Assembly (NCBI RefSeq): GCF_003918875.1
Contig: NW_025765792.1
Coordinates: 186,001 to 250,000, forward strand
Length of the DNA: 64,000 nucleotides
Direction of reading: 5' to 3'
DNA from: Haliotis rubra
Lineage: Eukaryota
Each line of letters opens with the position of its first letter. Positions within the stretch are counted from its first letter, which is position 1. The position numbers were made by a program, and so were the translations under genes. Positions 22,042 to 53,803 of this stretch are shown here, piece by piece. Under the pieces are notes generated by a model. It saw only the letters and a program-made list of their open reading frames with translations, was not told the origin of the DNA and ran no database searches.

Positions 22042-25000
22042 ATGCTTGGGTCAGGGGTCAGAGGTCGTGCCCTGCAGGGGGCGTGGCATGTTATTCAAAA
22101 CCAACTGCGACAGGTACAGACGAGTGGTGTACAAGCAGCAGCGGCTGCCGACGTCAAGCCATTCTTCTACCAGGATATCTTTGAACATGAGAAGAAAGCA
22201 GAAGTCCCATGGAAAAAGTTATCAGGTTTGTTTTGAAAAAAAATAATTCTTTTTTCAATTTTGTCCACTGGGAAGAGAGCATATGCCGCATGGAAAAATT
22301 GACTGTTTTGTCTTCAAAATTTGTATTTGTCATATTAGATTTGAATTTATCTGTTTGGTTGTCAGTTTCCAAGGGTAGTCTAAATTAACAGAAAAAAACA
22401 ACACCACTCCTGGTACTCAGAATTATCAACAGATGAAGAATCCACAGACTGAGAGAGTATTGCTAAGAATAGATTAAAACTAGAAAGACTTTCATTCTAA
22501 TGAAGTTCAGACAGTTGAAATGAATTTGCTTCAACAGGTTCTCAGAATGGGTATATTCCAAAACACTGACACAAACTCTTTTATTTTTTTACATAAATTC
22601 TCATGATTGAATTGAGCAATGTCTTTTACATGTCCCCTCCAATCATGGACATTTTGTCATTCTACATGTTATTTGTATGTGGTGACAATGTCAATGTTTT
22701 CGTCCTTGTAGGCGACTATGTATCGACGTTTGATGTGAAGGGAAGGAAGGTTCTTCACATACAACCTGAAGCCTTGACCTTGCTGGCAGAGAATGCCATG
22801 ATTGACATTTCTCATCTCCTTCGACCCGGACATCTCCAGGTGATATGATCACAACAATATTTCTGTTTCATAATTTTATCTGATTTCTTTTTTTGATGTT
22901 TTTGTACAGTTTTTACATTTCTACATGGTAGATTTCATCTAACATAATCACAATGATAAGTTCTTGGTATGCACAAGGGACATAACTCTGTTCACTGAAT
23001 TCTGGCACCTTCAGGGAAAGGGTCAATGGTGCCCCTCCCATCCCTTGTCTTTGTGGACAAGGACACAGATCATCACTACTTCAACTTTTTATAATTTATT
23101 CAGATACAGTCAAATCCCGATGAGTCGAATCGCTGGGGATCAAGTAATAAATTCGACTTATCGATGTATTCGAGACATAGGTATGTCTATGAGGGTAGAA
23201 AAAAAGATGATCCAGTCCTAATTCCTCTGCCTAAGCATTTGTTTATCTAATGATTTCCATATCACTAATAGGGACACCTTATCAGTTCCAGTCTGATTAG
23301 CACAGACAGTAATTTCCGTAAAATCACTAATCTGCCTTTTGAACTCACCCGTCAATGGCGGAAAGGTGTGAGCCGCGCTGGTTTGTTAATTGGATCAGTT
23401 TGCTACACCAGACAATTTCTCATTGACTGACTTCGGCTTATGTATACAAGATTGCTGTTGTTTGAATCTCATGGGACCAAATTTCCTTCTCGAGTCATCG
23501 TGTGTATTTATGAGACGAATTCGTGTAACCGGTATTCAAATGATGACAACTATAACAGTGAATGGTCAGGACCGACAGGTACTTTTGAGTTTTGCATAAT
23601 ATTCGAGACAGCGGCATTCGACTCATCGGGATTTGACTGTATTTTGCTCCATTGGTGTGGTGCCTCTGCAGCGAGATCTGACTAACTAATGGTCTGTTTT
23701 GTGTTTTGTTTTCCAGCAACTGTCAAATATCCTAAAAGATCCTGACGCCTCCAGTAACGACAAGTTTGTGGCTCTGGAACTGTTGAAGAATGCAAATGTT
23801 GCAGCTGGGATGGTGCTGCCTGGTTGCCAAGATACAGGAACAGCTATCTGCATTGGTAGGTATTCAATTTTCCAATCTCAGTAATAACTTCACTGTTCCA
23901 GGGTAGGGTTTCAACGAGCAGCATCATTTGATTACTCATATCTTGACTCTGCTGTTATTTTGAATCATTGCTGAAGAAAATATGAGTGGAATGAATTGGT
24001 GTACTCTTTCCATTGTCATGGTAGATGTATACAAATCAAATATGAATAGCATTTGGGGTACTTGGGATATTGAACAGATTAAGAGTTATCTCCCTTGTAC
24101 CACAAACTCTCATGTAGTTATTCCCTGTGTCCGTGTGTTTGTGCCTGTCTGTTTTGAGGACTGCTAGTACTGTTATTGTGAATAATGTGAACAGTGTTCT
24201 TAATTAAGTGACTCTCAGTGTTTGAGTTCGAATCCTGGATGGGACTCAACTGAACAAAAGGACTAGAATCAGTACTTTATCGAGAAAGTGTAATCCAAAA
24301 ATATGACATATACTCATGGAAACAAATAAGGGAACACATGAAAGTACAAGTGTTCCTTTATTCTTTTCCAGGTTTCTTCACAAGGTATGTATTGCACTGT
24401 GAGTGAAATTCTGGAAATAGATAAAGGAACACTTGTACTTTCATGTGTTCCCTTATTTGTTTCTATGAGTATATGTTAAACATGATTATGTCTTTAGTCT
24501 TGCAGCAGAGTTTTGCTAAGGCCATCATGGTGATGTCTTTCATTGTTTTCCTCCAGGTAAGAAAGGTCAGTATGTGTGGACAGAGGGGAGGGATGAGGAT
24601 GCTCTTTCAAGAGGGGTATACAACACTTACACCAAGAGGAACCTCAGGTATTCCCAGGTAATAATTGAACTGTGATGGACTGTGTATTGATTAACTATTA
24701 ACAGGGAATTTTTGGTTACTTCTCAGTTTGCCTTAAACATGCCCTGAGCTTTTTATGATAGTGCCATAGGTTCTGAAACACTTATCCCTTGCACTCTCGC
24801 ATGAATCTCCTCCTAGGTGGCACCACTGGACATGTTTAAAGAGGTCAACACGAAGACAAACCTTCCTGCCCAGATCGAGCTGTACGCCACAGATTCCTCT
24901 CAGTATGACTTCCTGTTTATGGCCAAGGGAGGTGGCTCGGCCAACAAGACATTTCTCTATCAACAAACAAAGGCATTGCTGAATCCTGAAAGACTTATGA

Positions 25001-28000
25001 AGTTTGTAGATGAAAAAATTAAGGTCAGTAATCAATATATGTGAGAAATGTTCATTGATGCCTCAACAGTTATAGGTGCGAGGTTTGACATGTTTGAAAG
25101 AACATGTGTTTCCTGCATTCTTTCAAAATCATGTATATTTTCATCCAGCTGGCAAAGTTTATATCTTTAGTGACGTGCTGAAAATTAAAATTTAGTTAAC
25201 CTGGGAATTAGCATCTGATTCGTTTGACCAAAAAAGCACAGGCAATGGCGCTTCATCTTTTTGGTAAGGGTCATGAAAAATTGTACAAGGACTTAATGAG
25301 AGACTTCTTAAAACTTGACAAGCTGGAGGGAAGGATCATGATTTTTGGTAACTTAGTGCAACAAATACTCTCCTTTTTCTTTTGGCAGACATTAGGTACA
25401 GCTGCCTGCCCTCCCTATCATCTGGCCATCGTGATTGGAGGAACGTCAGCAGAGCTCACACTGAAGACCGTCAAACTGGCCTCCACACGATACCTGGATA
25501 CTCTCCCCTCTTCAGGTAATGATACGTTATAGGGATAACATTGTTCTGTAGCTTTGTGTGGCCTGTGAACTTTTGGTAACAAATTTTGGAGGTTCCAGGT
25601 CATCCCACTAGATGAAGATTTCAAACCAAAACCTTGTTTAAACCAAACCATACTGTTTGAGTTAAACCATACTGACTCACATGTTTTTCATTTATCAGGC
25701 AATGACCATGGCAGAGCTTTTCGTGACCTTGAACTGGAGCAGCAAATCCACAAACTGACTCAGAAAATGGGGATTGGTGCTCAGTTTGGCGGCAAATATT
25801 TCTGTCATGATGTGCGAGTCATCCGCCTACCGAGACATGGAGCTTCCTGCCCTGTGGGCATAGGGGTGTCGTGTTCAGCAGACAGACAGGTAAGGCTTGT
25901 TAGTTGGGTTGGTTAGGTAGCGAGGTGGCTAAAGTGTTTAACGCGTGAGACCTAAGTTCGAATCCTCTTTTGAGTCCCACTGGCTTGTCGTTGATGGAAC
26001 CACATTCAGTCAGATTTTCTATTTCTCAGAAAGTATCCTCAACATATTTTAGCAAGATGGCTTCTTCTTTAGGCACTTGGCAAAATAACAGAAGAGGGCG
26101 TGTTTCTGGAACAGCTGGAGACTGATCCCATCAAGTATCTTCCTGAGGTGGAGGCAGAGGACCTGGGAGGAGAGGTTGTGCAGGTAACATATTGTACCAG
26201 ATGGCTCAACTCAAACACAAATACCTGTGAAGATCCGGGTTAGAACTGGTTTTCAGCAACCCATGCTTGACGTAAGAGGCGACGAATGCTGTCAGGTGTT
26301 CAGGCTTGCTGACCTGGTTGATACATTTCATCGTATCCCAGTTGTGCAGATCGATGCTCACGCTGTTGAATCACTGGATTGTCTGGTCCAGACTTGATTA
26401 TTTACAGACCGCCCCCTTATAGCTGGAATATTGGTGAGTGTGGCGTTAAACAACATAAATCAAACACAAAACTATATGTGTTCTTATAAATCTACCAATA
26501 ACTGAAAAATTAAGAAAAAAATGTATTTGTTTTCCTGATATCCTGACTCATCATATTTTACACTTTGATCACAGAACCCAAAATGTGCCTCTTTACCGGC
26601 AGAGCAGCCACTGCCCTTGGTTACCAATCAGAGTTGTCTGTCCTTGATCCTCACTGCCTTCTCATTGCACAAGAGGATATTACTGTAATGAATATCTAAA
26701 TTCATGTAAAATTGTTGATCTGACCATGGGGCTTTTCAGATTGATTACACATTAAACCATTGTAAACACAGAATCGACGATAAATATGTAGCAGGTCAGA
26801 ATAGAGGTCACGCCTCAAATGAAAAAGTTTTAAAACTGCTGGGGATCTCTAATGGCAAATTACTTAATGAAATATAATTTCAAAATGTCAGTTAAATCAA
26901 TAAATGGAAAACCAACAATGCAGGATAATGAGTATGGCTGAGTCTCATTTCAAGCATATCAATTATCCTTGTGTAACCACGCCCATTTCTGGTGTCGCCC
27001 CGCCGTGATATTGCTAAAATCGGCGTAAAATCATACTTGCTCATTCCTTGTGTAACCACGCCCATTTTTGGTGCCCCCTGCCGTGATATTGCTAAAATCG
27101 GCGTAAAATCATACTTGCTCATTCCTTGTGTAACCATGCCCATGTTCAGTTTGGGGCTAGTTTTTTGGTGAAAGGTAACTTATTTTGCATTAATTGTGTC
27201 AGCAGCCTGATACTGAACATGAAACCCAACAAAAATTGTGACAACTTATGTTATTTAGGTGATTACCTTTGAATGTTGAATAAAAGACTTATGTCCCAGT
27301 GACTATATTGGAGGGTTCGGGGTTAACATTTGTTGCTACTAGACTAGTGGACTGGTGGGTCTTTAAATTTACTAGACCTGACCTAATGTCAACTAGATCA
27401 TACTGTTGGAAGACAAAACAAGCTTATTTTTATTATCAGCAGGATTATAGTACATACTAGAAGAACAAAGTATATTAAACACTAAACTATGTGATAATTG
27501 TTGCTTTCTTTTGTATATTATGAATACTGTATACCTTAACTTTTGATTTTCTGAAGAACGTTTATCATTAAACAGTAGCTTTTATTGTCTTTTTTACACT
27601 TGAATAAGCTTAATAACAGTCTTTGTAATAGTAAGGTCGTGGGTTTGATCCCCGACCGCGTCATACCAAAAGACGTTAAAATATGGTACTTGTTGGTCCC
27701 TGCCTGGTGCTCGACATTAATGGGTACAACAAGGACTGGTCGGCTCGGAGTCAGTATACTGTTTCTGAGTGGGGTATTCATGCTTCACTGCGGCATGGAA
27801 TCTCAGTGAACTAGCACTATAAAACCAGCTTCAGTCTGGGCTAGTACAAGCAGCCGCACATACACATACACTCGCATGCACGTCGTCATATGAGCGGAAT
27901 ATTCTCAAGCACGACGTTAAACCCAATTTCACCTTACCTCACCTTTGTAATAGTCATTATAATAGATGACGCATGGAAGATTTTTAAAAACGAATCAAAT

Positions 28001-30814
28001 ACAGTGATTTGAAACAGCATTCATTAACAATCTACACAACCAGTTGGGCTATCCAGACATGAATTTAACTAGACTGGACCAGCCATTTGCTGGACAATGT
28101 GTCGTGTGGATGTGCCTTAGTGTCGAACCCTGTATTGATCATCTTGTATCCCAGGTTGATCTGAACCGACCAATGAGCGAGGTGCTGCAACAACTTAACC
28201 AGTGTCCAATCAAAACTCGTCTGACGCTGACAGGGACGCTGGTGGTTGCGAGGGACATCGCCCACGCCAAGCTGCAGGAGAGGTTAGACAAGGGGGAAGA
28301 GATGCCCCAGTATATGAAGGACCACCCTGTGTACTATGCTGGGCCTGCCAAAACACCTGAGGTAAGGGGGGATAACTCTGCAATATTGACCATGAGTGGT
28401 ATCATTGCACAAATCTAGGGATAATTTTGTTGCATCGTGACCTGGGTTCGAATCCCAATTTGGGTACAATATGTATGGATTCTATTCTTGTTGTTCCCTT
28501 CTCTGTTATCTCTGGAAATTATTGCGAGAAATACACAAAGTATATATTGAATGTACATAAAAGATTGATGCCTATTTAACAGTATGTGTAGCAGTCCAGT
28601 TGAGAAGTGGTAGAAACAGGTGTTAACTGATTCTTCATCCAATCATTTGTATCAATGCTCCAGTCTTCATTCTCCAGACTGAAAGTTTTGAAACCAAGAT
28701 TTCATCTCAATTTTTCAGGGGCCGGTGGGACAGCCTAGTGTTTAAAGTGTTCGCTCGAAGATTTGGTTTTTTTATTCCCCATATTGGTAAAATGTGTAAA
28801 GCCTATTTCTGGTGTCCCCGCCGTGATATTGCTGGAATATTGTTAAAAGCAGCGTAAAACCATACTAACTCACTCACTCACTGACTGAGACTGACTGACT
28901 GACTGACTGACTCAATTCATCAGCACTATGCTTGTGCAGAAACAAGTAGCACAACTGGAGTATTTTGTCATTAAACAACAAACACATAATATGTTTGAAC
29001 CAGACATTTATATTCTCTCATCCAGGGATATGCAAGTGGATCGTTTGGACCCACGACAGCGGGCAGGATGGACTCCTATGTGAACTCGTTCCAGGCTGCT
29101 GGGGAAGCAAGGTCATGTTGGCCAAGGGCAACCGGAGTCGCCAGGTGAGTTCGGAGGGATAGGGAATTTACCGTTTGATTCTTAAAATAACCTTCAGGAA
29201 TTGGAAATGGATTTATCTATCTCAATGAAGTTGATTGGACAAACTTTTCAAGTTACAATTGCTTATTGTCTAGTTCATCATCAAGAAGGCCAAAAGTATT
29301 TCTCCTTACGGCCAAAAGTATTTCTCCTTACTGGCATACTTAAGTTTCTATATCTAACAACCAGCGTTGGAAGAGTGTCCACACAGGTAACCAAACTCCA
29401 TGTCCACATAGGTTGCCTATTTCCATCTCCACGAAGATAACCAACCTACACAGATAACTAAACTCTACGTTCACACAGATAACTAAACTCTGTGTTCACT
29501 CAGATGACTAAACTCTATGTTCACACAGATAACTAAACTCTATGTTCACACAGATAACTAAACTCTATGTTCACACAGATATCTAAACTCTGTGTTCACT
29601 CAGATAACTAAACTCTATGTTCACACAGATAACTAAACTCTATGTTCACACAGATAACTAAACTCTGTGTTCACTCAGATAACTAAACTCTATGTTCACT
29701 CAGATAACTAAACTCTATGTTCACTCAGATAACTAAACTCTATGTTCACTCAGATAACTAAACTCTATGTTCACACAGATAACTAAACTCAGACTCAGAT
29801 ACTAAACTCTATGTTCACACAGATAACTAAACTCTATGTTCACACAGATAACTAAACTCTATGTTCACACAGATAACTAAACTCTATGTTCACACAGATA
29901 ACTAAACTCTATGTTCACACAGATAACTAAACTCTGTGTTCACTCAGATAACTAAACTCTATGTTCACACCTGAATGTTCATACAGGTAACTAAAGCATG
30001 CAAGACCCATGGAGGGTTCTACCTGGGATCCATCGGGGGTCCAGCAGCCATTTTGGCCCAGAACTGTATCAAGAATGTCGAAGTCCTTGAATATCCTGAA
30101 CTTGGTAAGTTGTTAACCCCTTTCCCAAAACAAAGGTAGAGTAATGACAGAAGTCTTGCTCAGTATGACGTGAGAAAATGGAAGACTATAGCCTACTGGG
30201 TACCGCCTTGTTAGAAGGTTGTACACAGAGCCACTTATACCTGTGCCTTGCCTCTAGAAGGTTGTACACAGAAGCCACTTGGAGTATACATGGGCCTGTG
30301 ACATTGCCTCTAGCGGCGTAAAACCAAACTCAGTCAGTCTAAAAGGGGAGGATAATCATTAATTGCCTGCTTGATATGCTTGATAAAGTGTGAGTTGATG
30401 TGAGTGAGTGTGAGAATGACTTAAATGCTACTTGAAAGGACTGACAAGCCAAGGGATTTTGGGGTTTATGGCAGTGTTATCTTTTGTGAGCATTTGACAT
30501 TTTTGTCAAAGCTGGTTATTTGGTTTGTTATCTAACGCCACACACAGCAATATTGCACAGCTATATTGCGACTGTCTGTAAATAATCAGGAGTCAGGACC
30601 AGACAATCCAGTGATCAACAGCATGAGCATCAATCTACGCAATTGGTTTTGTCAAGGCAAAAGTATCTATGAAAGTTTTCATTTGGCAGTAATCCACCGT
30701 GGTTGTTTTGCAGGTATGGAGGCAATATGGCGAGTGGAGGTGGAGAATTTCCCAGCATTCATTGTGGTGGACAATAAAGGAAATGACTTTTTCCAGGAAT
30801 GGCAGCTGGAGTAA
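22042..30814 (+). CDS. fumA: Class I [4Fe-4S] fumarate hydratase (FumA/FumB-like), mitochondrial precursor, copy 1; 1-nt deletion in exon 10 as assembled
   Basis: 12 GT-AG exons: 22042-22225, 22712-22839, 23717-23855, 24557-24657, 24817-25023, 25389-25515, 25699-25889, 26073-26183, 28155-28361, 29026-29144, 29987-30104, 30714-30814. Motifs [92 protein letters not shown]. Exon 10 is 119 nt versus 120 nt in copy 2. Confidence 0.95.
23107..23639. mobile_element. Tc1/mariner (pogo/Tigger-like) MITE
   Basis: TIR CAGTCAAATCCCGATGAGTCGAAT with TA duplication. The paralogous intron in copy 2 (about 40385) has the empty TA site. Confidence 0.9.
26967..27143. repeat. Tandem duplication (about 79 bp) containing the SINE-B 3' portion
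   Basis: CCTTGTGTAACCACGCCCATTT..GATATTGCTAAAATCGGCGTAAAATCATACTTGCTCATT occurs twice, plus a partial third copy. Confidence 0.75.
29376..29970 (+). repeat. 25-bp minisatellite ATGTTCACACAGATAACTAAACTCT, intron 10 of copy 1
   Basis: About 20 homogeneous units abutting exon 11. Confidence 0.95.
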
Positions 30815-31611
30815 TGTGACTGGTGTAACCTAGGGCAACAGTATTCTTGATGGATGCTTTGTGGAGGACACATACTTGATGGAGATGGATGGTTCATGAA
30901 TTCATGCTTCATATGAAATTATACTAAGAAATACTTGTCAAGAAGGGTACTTAGTATATTGTAAAGGATACTTTAAAAATACTTCCCACAGAATAATACT
31001 TCATGAATAATTTATAATTTTCTTGATTCATTGAGATACTCATTGAATATTAAGAGGATTCATGAATAATTCATTAAAGATTCTTCATGAATACCTTAAA
31101 AGGATTCTTTCTGAGTATCTTATAAGGAGTTGCCATGATTGCTTTATGGATTCTTCATAAATACTTCATAAAGATTTCATAAATACAGCAAAAAACTTCA
31201 GTAAGAACTCTTTGTAAATATTTCATCAGAATTCTTCATGAACACTTCCATGAGAATCCTTCTGGAATAATTCCATACAGATTCTTCAATATTTTGGAAT
31301 GGATTCATAATGATTCATAATGAATATTTCCAAAAGGATTCTTCATGAATACTTAAAGAATGAATACTTTATGATGATATTTCATGAATACTGAACAAGT
31401 ACTGATGAGTAAACTGCACAGGGTTTGTGATACTGTTGATGGTTATTAGAGTGTGAATGATCAGTGATTGGATTATGGAGACCTTAGAGAATTAAACATG
31501 TATATTGTTGTTCTAACACTTAGTTTACTTTTCTATTTGAGTTTCCCAAAACATTTTGTTTCCCACAAACCCAAGTGGGAAAGGTGCATGGGTTATAAAA
31601 CTGTATTCAAT

Positions 31612-38052: not shown

Positions 38053-38860
38053 CATTCTCAAGACATTGACATTGACCACATTTGGAGTAGAACTGTCAGT
38101 TTGATGATTGCTGTAGGGGTCGTTGTCGGCACGGGTACCACAGACACCCGAGGTACGTTTCTGTATACAGAAATGTACATAATCAAGTCAAATTCAGAAA
38201 CGTACTTGGTGCCCCAAACGATGGATGAGTCCATTTTTCTAAACCCAAAATCTAGAAAATCTACCGCTTCATGCTGTACTTTCCTTTTGCTTGATTTCGA
38301 GTGATACTGTGCCTCGCGACTTGAATATTCATCCTTGTGTATGCTTGTTCTTATATAAGCAGTCCAATGAATCGCATACAGTATGACAGTTCTAATGAAG
38401 AAAACGGTGCAGTGCATAATGGAATCGTCCTAGGGTACATTTCTGTATTCTAATTTTGGCTTGGGTCCATATCTGTGTACTGAAACGTACCTGGGGTACA
38501 TATCTGTAGTCCCCTTGCCAACGACCCCTTCAACCACATTAGCCAGTAGAGTGTATCTTGAATCGACTTTGATGAATTCTCTTCGCCCGTTCATTATGTC
38601 TTTGTTTCAGAAGGGATGTCATCATCTCTATTGCACCATTATTTTATTCAGCACAGACTCTCACTTACAAGAGAAGTTGATTTCGATGTTTATTTTAGTG
38701 CCATACAAAATTACAAATAGGGCTAAAATTGGCAGTATGCTTGTATTCATAAATATAAAAAGAGAAACATTTGACAGATAAGGATGCAGGCCTATAAAGC
38801 CTTATTCACTCATTCGCTCAAGCACTGAACAACATTTATCGATGGGCATTTTGTTTTCAG

Positions 38861-41800: not shown

Positions 41801-44800
41801 TGGGCTTCACACATTGTACCCATGAAGGGAATCGAACCCAGATCTTCAGTGTGACGCTTTAACCACTAGGCTACCCCACCGTCCCTGGTAATAATTGACA
41901 GATGAACTGTGTATTGATAAACCATTAACAAGAAATGTTTGGTTACTTTTAAGTTTTCCTTAAATATGCAGTGAGCTTTTCTAATTTGGCTGCTGGTTCT
42001 AAAACACTCACCTCTTACACTCTCATATGAATATCCACCTAGATGGCGCCACTGGACATGTTTAAAGAGGTCAACACGAAGACAAACCTTCCTGCCCAGA
42101 TCGAGCTGTACGCCACAGATTCCTCTCAGTATGACTTCCTGTTTATGGCCAAGGGAGGTGGCTCGGCCAACAAGACATTCCTCTATCAACAAACAAAGGC
42201 GTTGCTGAATCCTGAAAGACTTATGAAGTTTGTAGATGAAAAAATTAAGGTCAGTAATCAATATATGTGAGAAATGTAACATATGTTATATTTGGGATTA
42301 CACTTTCTCAGTAAAGTACAGATTCTAGTACTTTTTAAGGTTGAGTCCCATCCGGGATTCGAACCCACACCCTCAGAGTCAGGCCCCTAATCGCCAGCAC
42401 ACAATGTCAGACGCCTAGACCGCTCAGCCACCGTGGCTTCCACAAAAATGGAAGTCGGACAACTGGTAGTCCAGACTGCGGACTTTGTGTACCCCTCTGA
42501 TAAGTGTCAGCCGCTGTGGCTGAGCGGTCGATACGATGTGATTCTGAAGAATCTGCTCACGGTAATAAAGGGCATTAACTCTCTCTTGACAAACATGAAG
42601 GCAGTCCCGTGATTGTAATTTATTCCACCTTAGACCATGACACTCCCCGCACCCAAAGGTCTGTCTGAACCACACACTCCTCAGCATAACGTTCACCACG
42701 TCTACACCAAACACATAATCGTCCGTCAGCATTACATAGATGAAGACGTGACTCGTCAGTGACTACCACACCATGCTATTGTTGTAACCTTTACTGAAAA
42801 TGCCTGCTAGCCCATTGTATACGCTCATTACGGTGTCTGTCAGTCAGAATTGGTCCAACGTAAGGACGTCGAGTATGGAGCCCTGTAGCGTGAAAACGGC
42901 GTCGCATGGAGTCATCGCTGATGACCCCAACGTCAACCCTGAACTAGTTCAGCAGTCCTGGCAGTCGGCAGTGTTCAATCACCGATATGGACAAGGTGAA
43001 TATGGCGATCCTGATGGAACGTCGTAACACGTTGTTGCCAACGTCATTGAAGGTCACGGGTGCTGCCTGTCTACTGATGTCGTCTATGAAGCCTAATGAT
43101 GGTGGAGTGGCCAAGTCCAAGTTGTCGAGCAGCATTCCTGCTGCTGGTGCCATCCTGAATCATGCCTAGTGCACGTTCTCCTTTGTGAGGTGTTAACCTC
43201 GGCATCTCTGTCCTCGTTTCACAATCGTTAGTGAAGCAATGAGAATCGGTTCTCATACACCTGCTTTTAATGTCACAGTCGGTATGATTTCAGAATGAAA
43301 TTCGCGCTTCTTTCATGGCGTGGCTGCATGTTGATGCAAGTTGAGTCATACTGTGGACAGGAATTTGCTTCTAAACCATTTTTTTCAACTGGACATGCCC
43401 TTCGACTTCATGTTAGTTATATTCATTGATCATTGTCATGCTGAAATCCATCTTGATGAAAATATGGACAATTTTAGACTGGTGCGTTTTCAATGATATT
43501 CAGTATATTTGAGCAACAGACGCCGGTCAGTTATGATTGGTGATACTAAATCTGAAAGTATCACGCTACTCTGTGGGGTTCCCCAAGGATCTGTGCTAGG
43601 TCCAGTCCTGTTTGTGATGTACACAAGTAGTCTCAGCTCCAGCATCAGACAGTATGGGCTGAACCACCATGCATATGCTGACGACACCCAGCTTTATCAA
43701 GGTTTCAAAGCAAGCGAAACAGTCGATGCACTTGTAAGATATACTGATTGCACTAAATCAATAAAAACATGGATGACATCAAACATATTAAAACGATGGA
43801 AACACTGAGGCCTTACTCGTTGGACCCAGACAGCGCATTCAACAGTGGAAAATCATGTCAGTGGGTGTTGGAGACCTGGGTGTCATCTTTGATTCTCCCT
43901 TGTCAATGGAAGCCCTAGTTATCAAGTGTGCCAGACCTGCTACTTCCATCTAAGAACTATTGGTAATATTCGCCATCTTATTACCACAGACGTAACAAAG
44001 ACACTAGTCCAACTACTCGTGATGTCCCGCATTGACTACAGCAACAGTCCGTTGTATGGTTTGAGTCAGGAACTGCTGAACAAACTCCAGAAGGTACAAA
44101 ATAGGGCAGCTCGTATTGTGAGATGTCACATAACACAGGTATTGATGTCCCTACACTGGCTTCCAATAGAAGCCCGGATCCACTTCAAGATCTTGTGTTT
44201 TGCCTACCACTGTTTGAATGGTACATCACCGAGCTATCTATCAGAACAGATCTCTCCATACCAGCCTTCACGATGTCTAAGGTCTGAAAACCAATGCCTA
44301 CTTGCAGAACCAAACTCACGACTAAAATCCTACGGCAACAGATCGTTTCAAGTAGCAGCATCTCAGTTATGGAACTCACTACCTCAGAACATAAAAGAAT
44401 CCCCCACCCTTGAGACATTCAAAACCAACCTAAAACCTTTCTCTTCAGAAAGTTCTATCCCCACGAACTATCTCCTCCCGTGAACTTCTCATCTGTGACT
44501 ATTGTAGCGCCTTGAGCATGCACCTTTGTGGATGGAACCCAGCGCAATATAAATAGACATTATTATTATTGTTATTATATGAATGAATATGTATCACTTG
44601 TTGAAAGGACAGGTGTTTTTTGCATTGTTTCAATATAATGTATATTTTCATCTGGTTGGCAAAGTGAACATAAGGCCTAAAAAGAAAAATGTTGTGGTTC
44701 CGATTACCCGACCGACCCTGGTGCCGACCCTATTTTTAAAAAAAAATATAATAAGCGTTCAGATACCATTGCTTTTTCCAGGCACCGACGGACATCGGTC

Positions 44801-47800
44801 ATTCTGGTAGTGAAAGTTGACATGGTGGCCGCAAGCTTGATTAAATACACAATTAAACATTGATAAATGTGTTATTAGTTTGTACTTTACTTCTAAAAAA
44901 AGTAAAAAAATATATTAAAAATTCCTATCTACCCAAATTTTAAAGAGCTGTAATCGGAACCACAACATTTTTTATTTGGCCAAAGTGACATGTAGAATAT
45001 TGAAAGTTGGTTACTGATTGGGTTCAGATTCTGTGACCAAAAATATATTGCTTTTTGACAATGTAATTGTCTAGTTTCTTGTAGATATTGTATCTATTTT
45101 ATGCATACTTTACCATGTTTTCAGATTTCTCATTTGAAACCAAATAGTCATTTGCATGATAATTACAATGTTAAAATATGAAATGTTTTTTTCTGAACAG
45201 TTAGGGACAGGTCCTTTATTGTAAGGGGAACAAATTGGGCAGGGTAGAAATATGACTGTCTCAAGGGAAAGTGATCTAAAATAATATGGATAGTTGGGAG
45301 GTTCAGGAAAAATGGACATTTTATGACAAAATGTACAGTTCTTTTCTATTTCGTCTTTTTGGTGAGGGTCATGAAAATTTGTACAAGGACATAGGGAAAG
45401 TCATCCCAAAACTTGACAAGCTTGAGGGGAGGATAATGATTTGTAGTATTTCAGTGCAACAAAAGCCTCTGACTCTTTCTTCTTCCAGACATTAGGTACA
45501 GCTGCCTGCCCTCCCTATCATCTGGCCATCGTGATTGGAGGAACGTCAGCAGAACTCACATTGAAGACCGTCAAACTGGCCTCCACACGATACCTGGATA
45601 CTCTCCCCTTGTCAGGTAATGATGGTGGTGGTGGAATTGGGTTTAACGCCGTGCTTGAGAATATTTCGCTCACATGACGACGTGCATGCGTGTGTATGTG
45701 TTTGTGTGGCTGCTTGCACTAGCCCAGACTGAAGCTGGTTTTATAGTGCTAGCCCACTGAGATACCATGCCGCAGTGAAGCATGAATACCCCACTCAGAC
45801 ACATTATATTGACTCCGAGCCGACCAGTCCTTGTTGTACCCATTAATGCCGAGCGCCAGGCAGGGACCAACAAGTACCATATTTTAACGTCTTTTTGGTG
45901 TGAGGAGACCATGGATCGAACCTGCGACCTTCCGCTCTCCAGGCGGACGTCAGGTAATGATACGTTATAGGGATAACATTGTTCTGTAACTTTGTGTGGC
46001 CTGGGAACCTTTGGTAACAAATTTTGGAGGTTCCAGGGTATCCGACTAGATGAAGATTTCAAACCAAAACCTTTTTGATGCAGAGTAAACCATACTCACT
46101 CACATGTTTTTCATTTATCAGGCAATGACCATGGCAGAGCTTTTCGTGACCTTGAACTGGAGCAGCAAATCCACAAACTGACTCAGAAAATGGGGATTGG
46201 TGCTCAGTTTGGCGGCAAATATTTCTGTCATGATGTGCGAGTCATCCGCCTACCGAGACATGGAGCTTCCTGCCCTGTGGGTATAGGGGTGTCGTGTTCA
46301 GCAGACAGACAGGTAAGGCTTGTTAGTTGGGATGGTAAGGTAGCGAGGTGGTTAAAATGTTTAACGATGAGACCTAAGTTCGAATCCTGTTTTGAGTCCC
46401 TCTGAATTGTCGTTGATGGAAACACATTGAGAAGGGCTGCAACGATTTGGTTCATCGGAAATCGAATCTGACACCTTAGTTTCGATTTTCAGTAACCATT
46501 ATCACTATTTCGATTCGATATTTGAGTGATGTTCTGTGTTTAAACATCATATCGTATATATATGAAAAAGGTTACATCATTTACATTCCTGATTTTCTAG
46601 TGAAATCTTGGAAAAAGTTTTCAGTGTGATAAGTGTTTTTAAATAAACTCTGAAATCTGATGTTTTACTTGTATGAAGAATCGAATCGAAAATGATCGAA
46701 TCGAGGGTCCAATATCTGGAAAGCTCGTAAAACTAAAATCAGAATGACAAGGTCTGGGTGAATCGTTCGCAGCCCGAACATTGAAGTGCAGCCCTAACAG
46801 AGATTTTCTATTTCTCAGAAAGTATCCTCAACATATTTTAGCAAGATTGCTTCTTCTTTAGGCACTTGGCAAAATAACAGAAGAGGGCGTGTTTCTTGAA
46901 CAGCTGGAGACTGATCCCATCAAGTATCTTCCTGAGGTGGAGGCAGAGGACCTGGGAGGAGAGGTTGTGCAGGTAACATATTGTACCAGATGGCTCAACT
47001 CAAACACTAATACCTGTGAAGATCTGGGTTAGAACTGGTTTTCAGCAACCCATGCTTGTCGTAAAAGGTGACTAATTGGATCGGGTGGTCAGGCTTGCTG
47101 ACTTGGTTGATACATCGTATCCCAGTTGCGTAGATTGATGCTCACGCTGTTGATCACCGGATTGCCTGATCTAGACTTCGTTATTTACAGGCCGACTCCA
47201 TATAGCTAGGATTTTCGTGAGTGTGGCGTTGAAGAACAAAACAAACAAAGCAGGTCAGAATAGAGGTTACATCTCAAATGAAAATGTTGTTTAAGCTGTT
47301 GGGGATCCCTAATGGCAAATTAAATAATGAAATATAATTTCAAATCTGTTAAATTAATGAATATGAAACCAACAAAGCAGGAGTCTGGTTGAGTCTTATC
47401 TATCTCCGTTATCCTTGTGTAACCGTAAAGAAATATACAGTGAAAGGGGAAGAAATATTACATCAATGCGTTAAGCAGTAGAGCTGAAACGGTATGCTCT
47501 TCACGGTACGGTATGTAGCATTTATTAAGAGAATTTAACATTTTCCTTCCATTGTTGGTACGGGTCTCGCTCAGTTCATCTCAAATCTAAAATAGACAAA
47601 ATTGTTAACACTGCAAGTAAAATCGCTGGAGTCAGATTTGAATTTTTATCATCAATATATGAGCGGCAACTCGTGAATCAAGCTGTAAAAATCATATCTG
47701 ACCGTACTCACTGCTTAAATTCGGAATACAACCTCCTCCCTTCAGGCCGCCGCTACAAAGTTCCAATTGTGAAAACTAAGAGAGACCGTACATCCTTTAT

Positions 47801-50800
47801 TCCAAGTACCATATCTCTCTTAAACAAATGCGAAGATACCTAAATCAAAGAATTTATGTAAATATGTTTGGTATCTCTCTAATGTGTCAGTAGCTCTGCT
47901 GATGTAACACAAATTCCTGAAAAGGCATTAGAGTATTATTCTATACCATTCTATTCTATCTTCACGGTTCAGTCTGTTTCGGTTCGGTATATGATAACTT
48001 ACTTCCAGGAAAAAAAACGGCCGTCGAGCAAAGAAATACATAGATTTTGACAAAGTGATTCGATTTCTAGACATTTTAGAAAAGGTTTAAAATATCAATA
48101 AAATGACGGTACGAAAACCGAAAATACTGAATTTTTAGATTGCATTACGGTGTAGTACCTAAACCGAGGGCAAAATACAGCGGTTCTACTAATACTGCAG
48201 TTTACCGTTTCACCCCTATTAAGAAGGGTTTAGTTGTTAACTGTGATGTCAATAGAGCAGCTGTCAGTTTGCAAATGGCAATAGTTGGCATCCTTAGAAT
48301 ACCCATGAAGCTTTTCAAGATAATACAAATATACTATTAGTCTGAAACACAATTAGGAATTGTTCCGTGAAGTTCAAAATAGTAGCTGCTTAGAGGATTG
48401 TGAAATTAATTATGTATGCATTCTCATTTGCAAACCGATATTCAGTCACTGAACTAAAAATTTGTGAAGCATGTAATTTCTTATCTACGTTCTGTACTCT
48501 CTCTCTTATGCTCGACAGCAGAGTGGAAACAAACTGTAACTGAAGTTTTTTGCCTCTCGTGTACCATTCGCCCGAACACACCCTGCTGCACCCATATCTA
48601 GACAGTCTGGCAGCTCCTGAAAAGCGTGAAGCTTGTCCTAAGATTGACCATGTGATCCCTTTGTGTAGTTATTCTTTTTCTTGTCGCACTAGGGTGCTGA
48701 TGTGCTGTGAACTGTGGCAAATGAACTGACTTAAATAACCCTTAACATCATTGGGAAAGAAGATTCAACGTCAAGAAAAAGAAAAGATTGCATGGACTGC
48801 AAGAAGACGTTCTCCATCTCGGACCCACATGCATCCTGCATTGACTGCAATGGTCTTTGAGATTGGAAGACCAGGTACCGCCTATGCGCCAAGTTGAATG
48901 ATAACAACTTTGCTAACTATACTCCAGACATAAGTCAGATGAATCAGGCTCCACTTCAGCTTAGAGATCGGAGAAAGAAAGATCTGATAAGAAGTCACAC
49001 AGAGCTTCCTCTTTGATGTCTGATTTTCTGGATGCACCTTACTTAAGTGAGTATTTGAGACGAAGCAGATGCAGCAATCAGAAACGCCCGCTAAATCAGA
49101 CCTCATGGGACAAACGCTACAGAGTAGACCTGTTTCGCCAACCATGGTCGAGTCCTTGCCTATTCAACGGGATCATCCATGACTTATCTACCAATGTGGA
49201 GAGAGATACTCAGTTCCAAGTCTCGGTCAAACTTCTGAAACTACAGAGGATGCAAGTACAAGACTCAGATGCCTGGATCAGTATGTTGAGACAAATCCCG
49301 ACTTATGAGATTCCTTTCGGGGCAGAAACTGCAGAGTTTTCCTGGGTCATAGCGAAAAATCAACTGCCAGGGCAACCGGATAGACTCTTCACTTTACCGC
49401 CATTGTCCACCATACTCGGGCCTGACGATACTCTGTCCAGTAAGAGCTCTGAGGATACACATCGCTGCCTCGCAAGACTGTCGCAGGTTACATAATCGCA
49501 TGTTTATCCCGCTCTCAACAGCCTCTAGAGCAGAAGTCTCCCACACCATGTTGGCCTTCTGTATGAGATCAACCATCCTCTAGGCCTTCGCCAGGTTCCC
49601 CGTCCAGCTGCGTCGAACCCTCATGAGACTCGGGCCTAGCATCTACAATGGATTTTCACAGCAGCTATTCGTTGACATCTATTATGGAGGGATGTTTCTG
49701 GACATCAGAGACAGTCTTTGTCCCCCACTACGTACGAGACCTCTCAGTGACTGATGTAGAAGGACTCCATCAGTTTGGGCCCTTTTTACTGGCGCATCAG
49801 CTGTCCTTGGCCCAACAACACAGACAGTGTAACGTTATCCTCTGTCCATGGAATCGGTGTTACCTTGTAAAAGTGAATCAAGGTGTCTTCATACGACTTC
49901 ATCTTGGTCCTACTTTCCTTGGGCATGGATCTTCCTCGCCTAGAACCACACTGGAGTATTGCAGTGCATTCATCGCTGGGCAACTTCATCATAGACTGAG
50001 AGGCCAGTCTTGTACTACGATGCAGAGGTGATTGACACTCATACTCGTTGACCTCCACCCTAGCAAGCAATCACGTCAGTGGAGTATGAATACCGAATTT
50101 CAGTGGATTCCGATGCGCTCTGTTCCTGGCTGCCGGACATATCCTTGATCAAGCTTAAGCAAAGGAGCATGGGTCATTCGATGAATGTTAAACAGTTGAG
50201 ATAACCGAACCGTCCGCCTTTCGCCGTTATATGTGATCGCAGGGGTGGTTTCGAAGCAGGGGCTGGCCTGACTAGAGTCACAAGACAAGAAGAAAGTCAG
50301 GGAAACTTGTCTGACAAATGATACAGTGTGAAACGCACATAAACACGCACAGCCAATGTCAAATTGATCATTGCTGACACCTTTTCATGATTTTTGCTGC
50401 CCATGTTTAGTTTTGGGCTAGTTTCTCGGTGAAAGGTTACTTTATTTTGCACAAATCGTGTTGGCAGAAATGCTTTGTAAACTGCCTGAAACCGAACATG
50501 AAACACGACAACAATGGTGACAACTAATGTTATTTAGGTGACTACCATTGACTGGCGAATACAAGACTTATATCCCAATGACTACTTTGCCCATCTTGTA
50601 CCCCATGTTTTATAGGTTGATCTGAACCGACCAATGAGCGAGGTGCTGCAACAACTTAACGAGTATCCAATCAAAACTCGTCTGACGCTAACAGGGACGC
50701 TGGTGGTTGCGAGGGACATCGCCCATGCCAAGCTGCAGGAGAGGTTAGACAAAGGGGAAGGGATGCCCCAGTATATGAAGGACCACCCATTGTACTATGC

Positions 50801-53800
50801 TGGGCCTGCCAAAACACCTGAGGTAAGGGAAAAAACTCTGGAATAAAGACCATGATCGGTAGCATTGCACAAATACACGGATATTTTTGTTGCATCTTGA
50901 CCAGATTTCGAATTCCAATTTGGGATTTAATTCTTCCTGATATCTCTGGAATATTGAGAAAAATATACAAATATATAATAAATGTACATAAAAGACTGAT
51001 GCCTATTTAACAGTATGTGTAGCAGTCCAGTTGAGAAGTGGTCAGAACAAGTGTCAGCTGATTCTTCTTCCAACCATTTGTATCAATGTTCCAGTCTTCA
51101 TTCTCCCGACAGTGAATGTTTTGTAGCCAAGATTTCATCACAATTCTTCAGCACTATGCTTGTGCAGAAATGAGTAGCACAACAGTAGTATTGTGTCATT
51201 AAACAAAAAACAAATAATATGTATGAACCGGACATTTATTTTCTCTGATCCAGGGGTATGCAAGTGGATCATTTGGCCCCACATCAGCGGGCAGGATGGA
51301 CTCCTATGCAAACTCGTTCCTTGCAGCAGGGGGAAGCAAGGTCATGTTGGCCAAGGGCAACCGCAGTCGCCTGGTCAGTTAGGAGGGATAGGGAGTTTGC
51401 CAACTGTAAACCTCAAATCTTTCATGCTCAATGTTCGATTCTTAAAATAACTTTCAGGAATTGGAAATGGTTTTATATCTCTCAATGAAGTTCATGGGAC
51501 AAACTTTTCAAGTTACATTGGCTTCTTGTCTAGTCCATCATCAAGGTTTTCTTCTCAAGTATTTCTTCTTGTTGGGATTCTTAAGTTTCTATATCTAACA
51601 ACCAGTGTTAGGGGTTGTCCACACAGGTAACCAAACTCCCTGTCCACGCAGGTAACCAAACTCCCTTTCTGAACAGGTAACCAAACTCCATGTCAACACA
51701 GGTTACCAACTTCACTGTCCACAGAGGTAACTAAACTGCATGTCCACGCAGGTTACCAAACTCCATGTCCGAACATGTAACCAAATTACAAAACTCCATG
51801 TCCACACAGGTAACCAATTTCCATGTCCACACAGGTTACCAAACTCCATGTCTACACAGGTAACCAAATTCCATGTCCACACAGGTTACCAAACTCCATG
51901 TACACAGGTAACCAAACTCCATGTCTACACAGGTAACCAAATTCCATGTCCACACAGATAACCAAACTCCCTGTGCACGCAGGTAACCAAACTCCCTCTC
52001 TGAACAGGTAACCAAACTCCATGTCTACACAGGTTACCAAATTCACTGTCCACAGAGGTAACTAAACTGCATGTCCATGGAGGTTACCAAACTCCATGTC
52101 CGAACATGTAACCAAATTACAAAACTCCATGTCCACACAGGTAACCAAATTCCATGTCCACACAGGTAACCAAACTCCATGTCCAAACAGGTAACAAACA
52201 CTAAGTCCACACAGGTAACAAACCTCCATGTTCATACAGGTAACGAAAGCATGCAAGACCCACGGAGGGTTCTACCTGGCATCCGTCGGGGGCCCAGCAG
52301 CCATTCTGGCCCAGAACTACATAAAAAATGTCGAAGTCCTTGAATATCCTGAACTTGGTAAGTTGTTAACCCCTTTCCCAAAACAATTGTATGGAACTGA
52401 CAGATGTAAGTCCATATTAAACTGCATTCGATTACAATAATCATAGCTCTTCAAACCCAGGGTTTCAATCTACAACGCCGTGTTTTCAATATGATGATCA
52501 TTACTATATATTAATGTCTCGGCCTGAGGACTGACTAAATGAATCAGGGCTCAGGACAATATGGAAATATTCATAAACTTGTGTTGCATCAGAACCACGA
52601 ACTGGACCAATGGTCACAAAGATCATGTATGAGTGAGTGAGTTTAGTTTTACGCCGCACTCAGCAATATTCCAGCTATATGGCGGCGGTCTGTAAATAAT
52701 CGAGTCTGGACCAGACAATCCAGTGATCAACTGCATGAGCATCGATCTGCGCAATTGGGAACCGATGACATTTGTCAACCAAGTCAGCGAAACTGACCAC
52801 CCGATCCCGTTAGTCGCCTCTTACGACAAGATAGTCGCCTTTTTATGGCAAGCACATGGGTTGCTGAAGACCTATTCTACCCCGGATCTTCACGGGTCAA
52901 GATCATGTATAGTCTGATGTGAAAATAGTGACTGAGTTTAGTTTTACGCCGCACTCAGCAATATTGCAACTATGTGATGGCGGTCTGTAAGTAATCGAGT
53001 CTGGACCAGACAATCCAGTGATCAACAGCATGAGCATCGATCTGCGCAATTGGGAACCGATGACATGTGTCAACCAGGCCAGCGAGCCTGACCACCTGAT
53101 CGCATTAGTCCCCTCCTACGACAAGCATGGGTTACTGAAGGTTCATTCTAACCCGGACCTTCACGGGTCTGATGTGAAAATATGGAAGACTGTACTCTAC
53201 ATAACATATGTTATATTTGGGATTACACTTTCTTAGTAAGGTACAAATTCTAGTACTTTTTGTTGGGTTGAGTCCCATCCGGGATTTGAACCCACACCCT
53301 CAGAGTTTGGCACCTAATCACCAGCACATAAAGTCAGCCGCCTAACCCACTAAGCCACTAAGACTTCCACCAAAATGGAAGTCGGACAACTGGTAGTCTA
53401 GACTGCGGACTTTGTGTACCCCTCTGATATGTTTATACTCTACGGCTTTGAACCAAGTTTAGAGGTTGTACACAGAGCCACATATGCAACTGTGACATTG
53501 CCTCTAAGAGATGAGGACAATCATTAACGGCCTGCTTGATAAAATGTGCGTTCTAGAATGACTTCAATGCTACTTGAAAGGACTGACAAGCCAAGAGATA
53601 TTAAGGCAGCGTAATCCTTTGTCAGTATTCAACATTTTTTTCAAGGTAAAAGTGTCAGAGAAAGTTTTCATTTGGCAGTAATCCACCGTGGTTGTTTTGC
53701 AGGTATGGAGGCAATATGGCGAGTGGAGGTAGAGAATTTCCCAGCATTCATTGTGGTGGACAATAAAGGAAATGACTTTTTCCAGGAATGGCAGCTGGAG

Positions 53801-53803
53801 TAA
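38861..53803 (+). CDS. fumA: Class I [4Fe-4S] fumarate hydratase, mitochondrial precursor, copy 2 (intact, 577 aa)
   Basis: 12 exons: 38861-39044, 39580-39707, 40463-40601, 41617-41717, 42043-42249, 45489-45615, 46122-46312, 46862-46972, 50616-50822, 51254-51373, 52240-52357, 53703-53803. Total 1734 nt in one open frame. Same intron positions as copy 1, and all three Fe-S cysteine motifs are retained. Confidence 0.96.
40795..41119 (+). mobile_element. LINE (L2-like) 3' fragment
   Basis: FGEKASVH../[27 protein letters not shown], plus a tail like that of the 43.5-kb LINE. Confidence 0.7.
41120..41274. mobile_element. MITE with 5-bp TSD (hAT5-like)
   Basis: TIR CAGGGGCGTAGGAACGG, TSD CTATA. 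Nested at the end of a LINE tail. Confidence 0.75.
42277..42500 (-). mobile_element. Dispersed repeat family D with an internal tRNA-like segment
   Basis: Near-identical copy at about 53200-53430, partial copies at 24205-24310 and 41425-41537. Contains GGTGGCTGAGCGG...GGGTTCGAATCCC box motifs. Confidence 0.65.
42590..43205 (-). pseudogene. Tc1-family transposase remnant
   Basis: [50 protein letters not shown]: a Tc1-type HTH N-terminus followed by stops. Confidence 0.75.
43478..44578 (+). mobile_element. 5'-truncated L2/CR1-group LINE (RT C-terminal half)
   Basis: [52 protein letters not shown], with frameshifts and a (TAT)n tail. Confidence 0.92.
45624..45948 (-). mobile_element. SINE family A copy at the exon-6 donor of fumarase copy 2
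   Basis: Reverse complement of family A. 13-bp TSD GTCAGGTAATGAT (45611-45623, 45949-45961). Absent from copy 1. Confidence 0.88.
47500..47960 (+). mobile_element. LINE 3' fragment (Rex1/Babar-like)
   Basis: [14 protein letters not shown]...[32 protein letters not shown]. Confidence 0.6.
48600..50300 (-). mobile_element. Decayed retroelement-like insertion (possible gag), copy-2-specific
   Basis: More GC-rich than the flanks, broken ORFs, degenerate knuckle [15 protein letters not shown]. Absent from copy 1 intron 8. Confidence 0.35.
51615..52235 (+). repeat. 25-bp minisatellite ATGTCCACACAGGTAACCAAACTCC, intron 10 of copy 2
   Basis: More than 20 units abutting exon 11. Confidence 0.95.

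What the first reader, a model, noticed from the sequence alone, without database searches (positions are those of the whole stretch)
22042..53803. Intron-containing, mitochondrially targeted class I (Fe-S) fumarate hydratase, tandemly duplicated in an animal genome
Seen: two 12-exon genes whose mature region closely matches bacterial FumA/FumB, with all three cluster cysteines (PGCQDTG, ACPPY, GASCPVG). The N-terminal extension is Arg-rich and acid-free ([22 protein letters not shown]). Known: vertebrates use class II (FumC-type) FH, while oxygen-labile class I FH occurs in bacteria, protists and some invertebrates such as trematodes. Inference: a two-gene class I system could serve hypoxic malate dismutation in an intertidal mollusc. 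Eleven spliceosomal introns and flanking animal genes exclude contamination and recent HGT.
Basis: partly seen in the sequence, partly recalled or inferred. Interest (0 to 1): 0.8.

Follow-up and report, generated by a model that had tools for sequence, protein, structure and literature searches.

The report
Abalone tandem Fe-S fumarase gene pair
An abalone-like mollusc genome carries two neighbouring, intron-containing genes for the iron-sulfur (class I) type of fumarase, probably mitochondrial, but this enzyme type is already catalogued in a minority of animals, so the locus is a well-documented ordinary case.

Summary
Two head-to-tail genes on the + strand (22042-30814 and 38861-53803) each have 12 coding exons with GT-AG introns. 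Each encodes a 577-aa single-chain class I fumarate hydratase, 65-66% identical to E. coli FumA, with all three cluster cysteines and the known catalytic residues.

Copy A as assembled lacks one G in a G-run in exon 10, which shifts the frame. Every DNA and RNA contig laid there carries the extra G, so this is an assembly error. A spliced 2.1-kb RNA contig of copy-A type shows that A is expressed.

The copies are real paralogs under purifying selection (dN/dS 0.16). Copy B evolves faster (11 of 14 polarised changes) and its expression is untested.

These are the only class I loci in the 1.38-Gb genome, which also has a class II fumarase. Two other intron-bearing genomes share the 12-exon layout, and the group forms a eukaryote-like clade, so contamination and recent transfer are excluded.

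Class I fumarase in animals is already reported (81 of 1,277 proteomes; a Biomphalaria RefSeq protein seen by proteomics). The hypoxia idea is untested.

Verdict: new member of a known kind, low-to-moderate interest. The same scan noted the C-terminal paralog divergence on this window.

The parts
22042..22225 (+). Copy A exon 1 (start codon, presequence-like N-terminus)
   Evidence: The ATG directly follows an AG acceptor; GT donor; translation [16 protein letters not shown]....
22712..22839 (+). Copy A exon 2
   Evidence: Junction search against FumA; identical to copy B exon 2.
23717..23855 (+). Copy A exon 3 (PGCQDTG: cluster Cys139, Gln140, Asp141)
   Evidence: tblastn and junction search; PF05681.
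24557..24657 (+). Copy A exon 4
24817..25023 (+). Copy A exon 5 (KGGGS motif)
25389..25515 (+). Copy A exon 6 (AACPPY: cluster Cys258)
   Evidence: covered by the spliced RNA contig, X25 record 15 (table 8).
25699..25889 (+). Copy A exon 7 (RHGASCPVG: His and cluster Cys352)
26073..26183 (+). Copy A exon 8 (inter-domain linker)
   Evidence: Sensitive tblastn and junction search. The RNA contig has 110 nt between its exon 7 and exon 9 pieces.
28155..28361 (+). Copy A exon 9 (start of Fumerase_C domain)
29026..29144 (+). Copy A exon 10 (GPTTAGRMD). The assembly lacks one G after 29100.
   Evidence: 1-nt gap relative to copy B. The extra G is present in all laid DNA and RNA contigs (table 4).
29987..30104 (+). 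Copy A exon 11
30714..30814 (+). Copy A exon 12 with stop codon
38861..39044 (+). Copy B exon 1
39580..39707 (+). Copy B exon 2
40463..40601 (+). Copy B exon 3 (PGCQDTG)
41617..41717 (+). Copy B exon 4
42043..42249 (+). Copy B exon 5
45489..45615 (+). Copy B exon 6 (AACPPY)
46122..46312 (+). Copy B exon 7 (GASCPVG)
46862..46972 (+). Copy B exon 8
50616..50822 (+). Copy B exon 9
51254..51373 (+). Copy B exon 10 (GPTSAGRMD: Thr to Ser at the second Thr)
52240..52357 (+). Copy B exon 11
53703..53803 (+). Copy B exon 12 with stop codon
21680..31603 (+). Duplicated block A (gene plus about 360 nt upstream and about 800 nt downstream)
   Evidence: Self-blastn.
38175..54925 (+). Duplicated block B
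   Evidence: Self-blastn.
55657..58595 (-). Neighbouring nuclear gene for mitochondrial ribosomal protein L47 (at least two exons)
   Evidence: PF06984, E 1.5e-21, on the ORF 58167-58595. The ORF 55657-55983 looks to me like the L47 C-terminal tail but has no Pfam match.

Best explanation
These are two genuine, tandemly duplicated nuclear genes of an abalone-like gastropod. Another agent's note names the genome Haliotis rubra. Each encodes a single-chain class I fumarate hydratase.

Inferred from family knowledge: the 35-residue Arg-rich amphipathic N-terminus is removed on import into mitochondria. The mature enzyme dimerises and binds a [4Fe-4S] cluster through Cys139, Cys258 and Cys352. The cluster's free iron, with Asp141/His (acid) and Thr475/Arg (base), interconverts fumarate and L-malate.

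Shown here: the gene structure, intact frames, conserved residues, purifying selection, and splicing and expression of the copy-A type.

Inferred: mitochondrial location, activity, and any role in the TCA cycle or in hypoxic malate-to-fumarate flux.

Copy B is an intact, faster-evolving paralog. It arose after the split from the nearest other sampled species, or was homogenised with copy A by gene conversion in its 5' half.
For: - Pfam Fumerase and Fumerase_C hit only these two loci in the genome.
- There are 12 exons per copy, all with GT-AG introns at homologous sites.
- The proteins are 65-66% identical to E. coli FumA over 541 aligned residues.
- The exons score best against the NCBIfam single-chain class I FH models.
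- The best PDB matches are the Leishmania major FH structures 6mso and 5l2r.
- The cluster cysteines, KGGGS, the catalytic Asp/His/Thr/Arg and the Lys of LAKGNRS (my mapping to LmFH-2 K491, a position named in 10.1101/2022.09.03.506457) are present (residue roles from bioRxiv 10.1101/2022.09.03.506457).
- The exon-10 frameshift is absent from all laid contigs. A 2,123-nt RNA contig is spliced at exons 6-12 and carries copy-A letters in exons 10 and 11.
- dN/dS is 0.16, and dS reaches 0.19 in exons 9-12.
- Introns are only 73-93% identical where alignable and differ in length up to about 9-fold.
- Outside the duplicated blocks, the flanks share only dispersed repeats.
- MRPL47 lies next door.
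- L104 and L109 have the same 12-exon layout at 80% and 76% identity.
- In the tree, A and B are sisters (99). They join L104 (97), L109 (99) and three presequence-bearing or long-contig proteins (95).
- The N-terminus has 3 Arg and no acidic residue before D37. Its hydrophobic moment of 0.62-0.68 is above the maximum of the mature part.
Against: - Copy B expression was not seen. In the two RNA-type runs, only one contig, of A type, covers exon 9. B-type exons 10 and 11 would have fallen below the 93% likeness cut, so this is weak.
- No independent reads were laid on copy B, and depth could not be used because the runs are contigs only.
- The RNA and part of the DNA evidence comes from 'organism B', a different species label from the best DNA holder.
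- Mitochondrial targeting rests on simple composition and hydrophobic-moment measures, not a trained predictor.
- Enzyme activity is inferred from homology only.
Confidence: 0.85

Rival explanations
1. The duplication is an assembly artefact: two divergent haplotypes of one gene were placed in tandem.
For: The genome is a long-read assembly of a polymorphic mollusc, and the best public DNA run holds only 46% of the 31-mers. It contains at least one homopolymer error in this very gene. In X1, contigs shared by both copies have about twice the word depth of copy-A-only contigs (table 8). That fits two alleles as well as two paralogs.
Against: - dS is 0.19 in exons 9-12, and introns are 73-93% identical with large insertions. 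This is far beyond ordinary allelic divergence.
- The block boundaries are sharp, with 7 kb of unrelated spacer and no gap (N) between the copies.
- Contigs of a second species label are almost pure copy-A type in exons 10 and 11: 1 difference each, against 13 and 10 between A and B. The A/B split is therefore older than that species split.
- No third locus exists elsewhere in the assembly.
Confidence: 0.06
2. Copy B is real but is a silent or decaying duplicate on its way to becoming a pseudogene. Only copy A does the work.
For: - 11 of 14 polarisable amino-acid differences are derived in B. Several fall at positions invariant from E. coli to the other animals: T476S, V484A, Q488L, G519A, I521V.
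- Only about 360 nt upstream of the ATG is duplicated.
- Only A-type RNA contigs were seen.
Against: - B has an intact 577-codon frame and all 22 splice sites.
- The pairwise dN/dS of 0.16 is too low if one branch were neutral.
- All cluster ligands and the catalytic base and acid are kept, and T-to-S keeps the hydroxyl.
- The RNA test could not detect B in exons 10 and 11.
Confidence: 0.2
3. Copy B is a functionally diverged isoform, with altered substrate range, kinetics or oxygen tolerance. It would form a two-enzyme system tuned to normoxia versus hypoxia.
For: B-derived changes cluster in the C-terminal domain, including the Thr that contacts the substrate carboxylate. E. coli keeps paired class I enzymes, FumA and FumB, for different oxygen regimes (my knowledge).
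Against: dN/dS is the same in the two halves (0.17 and 0.15). The C-terminal clustering simply follows the higher dS there, which suggests that gene conversion homogenised the 5' half. There is no expression or biochemical evidence, and no sign of positive selection.
Confidence: 0.1
4. The genes are bacterial contamination or a recent horizontal transfer.
For: Identity to some bacteria (up to 72%) is close to the identity to the other intron-bearing homologs (76-80%).
Against: - There are eleven GT-AG introns per gene, and spliced RNA confirms six of them.
- GC content is like the surroundings.
- SINEs lie inside the introns, and MRPL47 is next door.
- The same intron positions occur in two other genomes, and the group forms a supported clade.
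Confidence: 0.01

Closest known systems
E. coli FumA/FumB (single-chain class I fumarate hydratase, NCBIfam NF011919/NF011920)
   Same: Colinear over 541 residues at 65-66% identity with only one 1-residue internal gap. It has the same two domains, the three cluster cysteines and the KGGGS motif.
   Different: The abalone proteins add a 35-residue presequence-like N-terminus and lack the last 7 residues of FumA. The genes have 11 introns. In the tree they group with Alphaproteobacteria, Actinomycetota and Myxococcota rather than with Enterobacteriaceae.
Leishmania major fumarate hydratases LmFH-1 (mitochondrial, PDB 6mso) and LmFH-2 (cytosolic, 5l2r)
   Same: These are the best solved-structure matches. 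The active-site stretch [18 protein letters not shown] and [17 protein letters not shown] are nearly identical. They are also a two-gene class I set in a eukaryote (bioRxiv 10.1101/158956).
   Different: In kinetoplastids the two genes encode one mitochondrial and one cytosolic enzyme. Here both copies carry the same presequence-like N-terminus. Copy B has Ser at the position of LmFH-2 Thr468.
Class I FH annotated in other animals, e.g. [quoted passage not shown]
   Same: It is a gastropod nuclear class I FH, detected at protein level in hemocytes (PMC6281880). Class I FH is reported in 81 of 1,277 animal proteomes (PMC13655608).
   Different: I could not fetch that sequence for comparison. 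I did not find a tandem pair with asymmetric divergence described in the papers searched.
Class II fumarate hydratase (FumC / human FH)
   Same: It catalyses the same reaction. A multi-exon class II gene is also present in this genome at C1180:136.9-148.3 kb.
   Different: It has an unrelated fold and no Fe-S cluster. There is no similarity to the window.

Membership tests
Class I (Fe-S) fumarate hydratase, single-chain FumA/FumB type | Fumerase (PF05681) N-terminal domain and Fumerase_C (PF05683) C-terminal domain in one polypeptide | tested here: met
   Both domains are tiled exon by exon in each copy, in order, on one strand. The spliced proteins align end to end with FumA.
Class I (Fe-S) fumarate hydratase, single-chain FumA/FumB type | Three conserved cysteines that ligate the [4Fe-4S] cluster | tested here: met
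   C139 (PGCQDTG), C258 (AACPPY) and C352 (GASCPVG) in both copies align with the corresponding cysteines of E. coli FumA. They correspond by motif to LmFH-2 C133/C252/C346 (my knowledge).
Class I (Fe-S) fumarate hydratase, single-chain FumA/FumB type | Catalytic and substrate-binding residues (LmFH-2 D135, H334, T467, R421, R471, K491, Q134, R173; KGXGS motif) | tested here: met
   All are present in both copies by alignment and motif. Roles are taken from bioRxiv 10.1101/2022.09.03.506457. Copy B has Ser at the neighbouring T468 position.
Class I (Fe-S) fumarate hydratase, single-chain FumA/FumB type | Closer to fumarate hydratase models than to the two-subunit enzymes or L-tartrate dehydratase | tested here: met
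   Exons score 46-118 bits on NF011919/NF011920, against 22-56 bits on the TtdA/TtdB and two-subunit models.
Class I (Fe-S) fumarate hydratase, single-chain FumA/FumB type | Bound oxygen-labile [4Fe-4S] cluster and fumarase activity | not testable with these tools
   This needs purified protein, anaerobic reconstitution, UV-vis/EPR and an activity assay.
Mitochondrially imported matrix protein | Cleavable N-terminal presequence: positively charged, amphipathic, lacking acidic residues | tested here: inconclusive
   The extension is 35 residues relative to FumA, with 3 Arg and no acidic residue before D37. The 18-residue hydrophobic moment of 0.62-0.68 exceeds the maximum of the mature part, 0.55. 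Presequence-like N-termini also occur in L109, P0157 and P0058. No trained predictor or experiment was available.
True tandem gene duplicate (not haplotig) | Both copies present on one chromosome at full single-copy depth | not testable with these tools
Indirect evidence (divergence, sharp boundaries, an A/B split older than the species split) favours true paralogs.

The most novel reading that the evidence does not exclude
In abalone the class I Fe-S enzyme, not the class II enzyme, is the mitochondrial fumarase. The tandem pair has begun to split into a conserved housekeeping copy (A) and a faster-evolving copy (B). Copy B's C-terminal-domain changes, including Thr-to-Ser at a substrate-carboxylate contact, would then adapt it to reverse (malate-to-fumarate) flux or a different oxygen regime during hypoxia.
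Probability: 0.1. Interest if true: 0.55.

Novelty: new member of a known kind. Interest (0 to 1): 0.25.

Why it matters
It documents cleanly that a mollusc keeps an oxygen-sensitive bacterial-type fumarase as an ordinary, intron-rich, expressed nuclear gene alongside the class II enzyme. It also shows that the gene has duplicated and is diverging asymmetrically. This is a useful data point for two questions: why some animal lineages retained class I fumarase while vertebrates, arthropods and fungi lost it, and how anaerobic mitochondrial metabolism works in molluscs. It does not open a new question, because the presence of class I fumarase in a minority of animals, often with predicted mitochondrial targeting, is already published. 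It also flags a homopolymer error in the reference assembly that would make copy A look like a pseudogene.

Tried and rejected
1. I aligned the 12 exon translations to E. coli FumA, hoping to build a full-length profile without typing the spliced protein. MAFFT scattered the short pieces, so I abandoned the alignment.
2. The exhaustive representative search with exon 5 returned mostly exon-sized fragments and no named close ortholog, because the library is clustered at 50% identity. The listing of cluster members gave no organism names.
3. Exact look-ups of three window exon ORFs, two specific to copy B and one to copy A, found nothing on record. So there is no independent assembly evidence for B.
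4. A paper search for the assembly size did not identify the organism. The species name rests on another agent's note and my memory.
5. I did not find the first exon of the class II FH gene, so I cannot say whether that enzyme has its own presequence.
6. The JBC version of the Plasmodium FH paper is not held, and its Table 1 is an image in the preprint. I therefore could not read which animals it lists.
7. Depth from read laying was not used as copy number, because the runs are contigs.
Full report
**What is there**

The window is G000:C902:186001-250000 of a 1.378-Gb, 2,855-contig genome. A self-comparison shows two colinear blocks on the + strand, about 21680-31603 and 38175-54925. Outside these blocks the flanks share only dispersed repeats.

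Pfam Fumerase (PF05681) and Fumerase_C (PF05683) match exon-sized pieces in both blocks and nowhere else in the genome. I used E. coli FumA (taken from NC_000913) as a guide for tblastn and a junction search. This gave 12 coding exons per copy, every intron GT...AG, with junctions at homologous places in the two copies.

Copy B (38861-53803) reads through as 577 codons. Both proteins align with FumA over 541 residues at 65-66% identity, with one single-residue gap. They contain PGCQDTG, AACPPY and GASCPVG (the three cluster cysteines). They also contain [30 protein letters not shown] and LAKGNRS.

The exons score best on NCBIfam's single-chain class I FH models. Their best solved-structure matches are the Leishmania major enzymes 6mso and 5l2r.

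**A frameshift that is not real**

Copy A as assembled is one base short in exon 10: 119 nt against 120 nt, with a G-run of 4 instead of 5 after 29100. This shifts the frame and gives an early stop.

I laid the contigs of four public runs on 25300-31300. The insertion 'G behind 29100' is carried at the full depth of DNA runs X1 (108.3 of 108.3) and X5 (41 of 41) and of RNA-type run X25 (18.4 of 18.4). In X24 one contig carries it (table 4).

The X5 and X25 pieces over exon 10 differ from copy A at 5 and 1 letters. Copy B differs from copy A at 13 letters there, so these pieces are copy-A type. The frameshift is a homopolymer error of the assembly, and copy A is intact.

**Expression and splicing**

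X25 record 15 is a 2,123-nt contig. It lies on exons 6, 7, 9, 10, 11 and 12 of copy A with contiguous record coordinates, and it leaves 110 nt for exon 8 (table 8).

This confirms six introns. It also shows that a copy-A-type mRNA exists in 'organism B', a species label different from that of the best DNA holder.

The 758 nt before exon 6 equal exons 1-5 almost exactly. The contig therefore starts about 1 nt before the ATG, which directly follows an AG acceptor. I infer an upstream non-coding exon.

Copy B expression was not tested. B-type exons 10 and 11 fall below the 93% likeness cut I used. In exon 9, where B-type contigs could have been laid, only an A-type RNA contig was seen.

**Are the two copies real paralogs?**

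There are 50 exon substitutions and 17 amino-acid differences between the copies. Overall dS is 0.084 and dN/dS is 0.16. dS is 0.042 in exons 1-8 and 0.19 in exons 9-12, with the same dN/dS in both halves. I read this as gene conversion having homogenised the 5' half.

Introns are only partly alignable, 73-93% identical where they align, and differ in length up to about 9-fold. The blocks have sharp ends, are separated by 7 kb of unrelated spacer, and have no assembly gap between them.

Contigs of a second species label are nearly pure A type in exons 10 and 11, so the A/B split predates that species split. Together these points make a haplotig artefact unlikely (about 6%).

**Asymmetric divergence**

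I polarised the differences with two outgroup genes. Eleven of the 14 resolvable changes are derived in copy B and three in copy A.

The B-derived changes include T476S. This is the second Thr of GPTT, LmFH-2 T468 by my offset from the PDB chain numbering. It corresponds to MjFH Thr81, which the paper lists among residues in close contact with the substrate carboxyl groups. The proposed catalytic base T467 is kept (bioRxiv 10.1101/2022.09.03.506457).

Copy B keeps all splice sites, its reading frame and its cluster ligands. It could be a relaxed or mildly diverged paralog. There is no evidence of positive selection.

**Host context and relatives**

Downstream on the minus strand lies MRPL47 (PF06984, E 1.5e-21). 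The genome also has a multi-exon class II fumarase at C1180:136.9-148.3 kb.

The exhaustive search with exon 5 found many exon-sized ORFs. Two of their contigs are L104 (ENA ERZ21930238, a 422-kb contig) and L109 (ENA ERZ24900295, a 705-kb contig). Each carries a complete gene with the same 12-exon layout, at 80% and 76% protein identity. A metagenome contig, L110, has a homolog with short GC-rich introns mostly at other positions.

I built a quick maximum-likelihood tree with 74 named bacterial sequences chosen by similarity to exon 9, so it is a biased sample. In it, A and B are sisters (99). They are then joined by L104 (97), L109 (99) and three unnamed proteins (95). Two of those three have presequence-like N-termini.

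This clade sits in an unresolved group with Alphaproteobacteria, Actinomycetota and Myxococcota, away from enterobacterial FumA. Contamination and recent transfer are excluded. The deeper origin is not resolved here.

**Targeting**

Relative to FumA there is a 35-residue N-terminal extension. It has three Arg and no acidic residue before D37. Its 18-residue hydrophobic moment is 0.62-0.68, above the maximum of 0.55 in the mature part. This fits a mitochondrial presequence, but it is not a trained prediction.

**What is known already**

A 2026 survey found class I fumarase in 81 of 1,277 animal proteomes (PMC13655608). An earlier catalogue states that class I FH occurs sparsely in multicellular eukaryotes and usually alongside class II. 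It adds that in many such organisms the class I enzyme is the one predicted to be mitochondrial (bioRxiv 10.1101/158956).

Another agent's note identifies this genome as Haliotis rubra and says that another gene of it is already in RefSeq (s1-344790). I did not verify this, but it agrees with my memory of that assembly's size.

**Verdict**

This is a correct and carefully described observation of an ordinary member of a known, patchily distributed animal gene family.

Three details are new here:
- the tandem pair;
- its asymmetric divergence, with signs of gene conversion;
- an assembly error that mimics a pseudogene.

The hypoxia and malate-dismutation reading remains speculation.

Noticed in passing
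window 29097-29101: The reference assembly has a G-run one base too short inside exon 10 of copy A. All laid public contigs carry the extra G. Automated annotation could mark this gene as a pseudogene or 'low quality protein'.
   Followed up: yes
window 28229, 28328-28329 (copy A exon 9): In DNA run X1 the only contig over exon 9 carries copy-B letters at 3 of the 8 A/B-diagnostic sites on an otherwise A-type background. Its word depth is about twice that of A-only contigs. This suggests ongoing gene conversion or shared polymorphism between the paralogs.
   Followed up: partly
window 29376-29970 and 51616-52248: There is a minisatellite-like array in intron 10 of both copies, seen as many staggered self-matches at 70-76% identity.
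   Followed up: no
window 26220-26451, 32887-33138, 35405-35643, 37627-37866, 39108-39344, 47009-47229, 52624-53173: Copies of one SINE-like repeat of about 230 nt lie in both orientations, inside introns of both genes and in the spacer. The same places have extremely high word depth in all runs.
   Followed up: no
window 3927-6368 and 9791-11246: These are long low-complexity arrays with strong GC skew; their ORFs translate as His/Thr/Pro-rich or Gly/Ser/Cys-rich strings. Each array lies at or near a masked N run (4218-4382 within the first, 11984-12118 about 700 nt beyond the second). I did not fill or look up the N runs.
   Followed up: no
G000:C1180:130.8-148.3 kb (L018-L023): This is the class II (FumC-type) fumarate hydratase gene of the same genome, with multiple exons. 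The exon encoding KTLRVERDSFGELKVP starts at an AG acceptor, so the start codon and any presequence lie in an upstream exon that I did not find.
   Followed up: partly
window 22041/22042 and 38860/38861: In both copies the start codon directly follows a polypyrimidine-AG acceptor, and the RNA contig begins about 1 nt before the ATG. A non-coding 5' exon is therefore likely. Only about 360 nt upstream is shared between the copies, so copy B may use a different promoter or 5' exon.
   Followed up: partly
L110 (JGI metagenome 3300048856): This is a class I FH homolog with short GC-rich introns whose read-through translates as HTHTH strings. Most introns sit at positions different from the animal-type genes, but one seems to share the position of intron 5. 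It is probably from a protist or alga.
   Followed up: no
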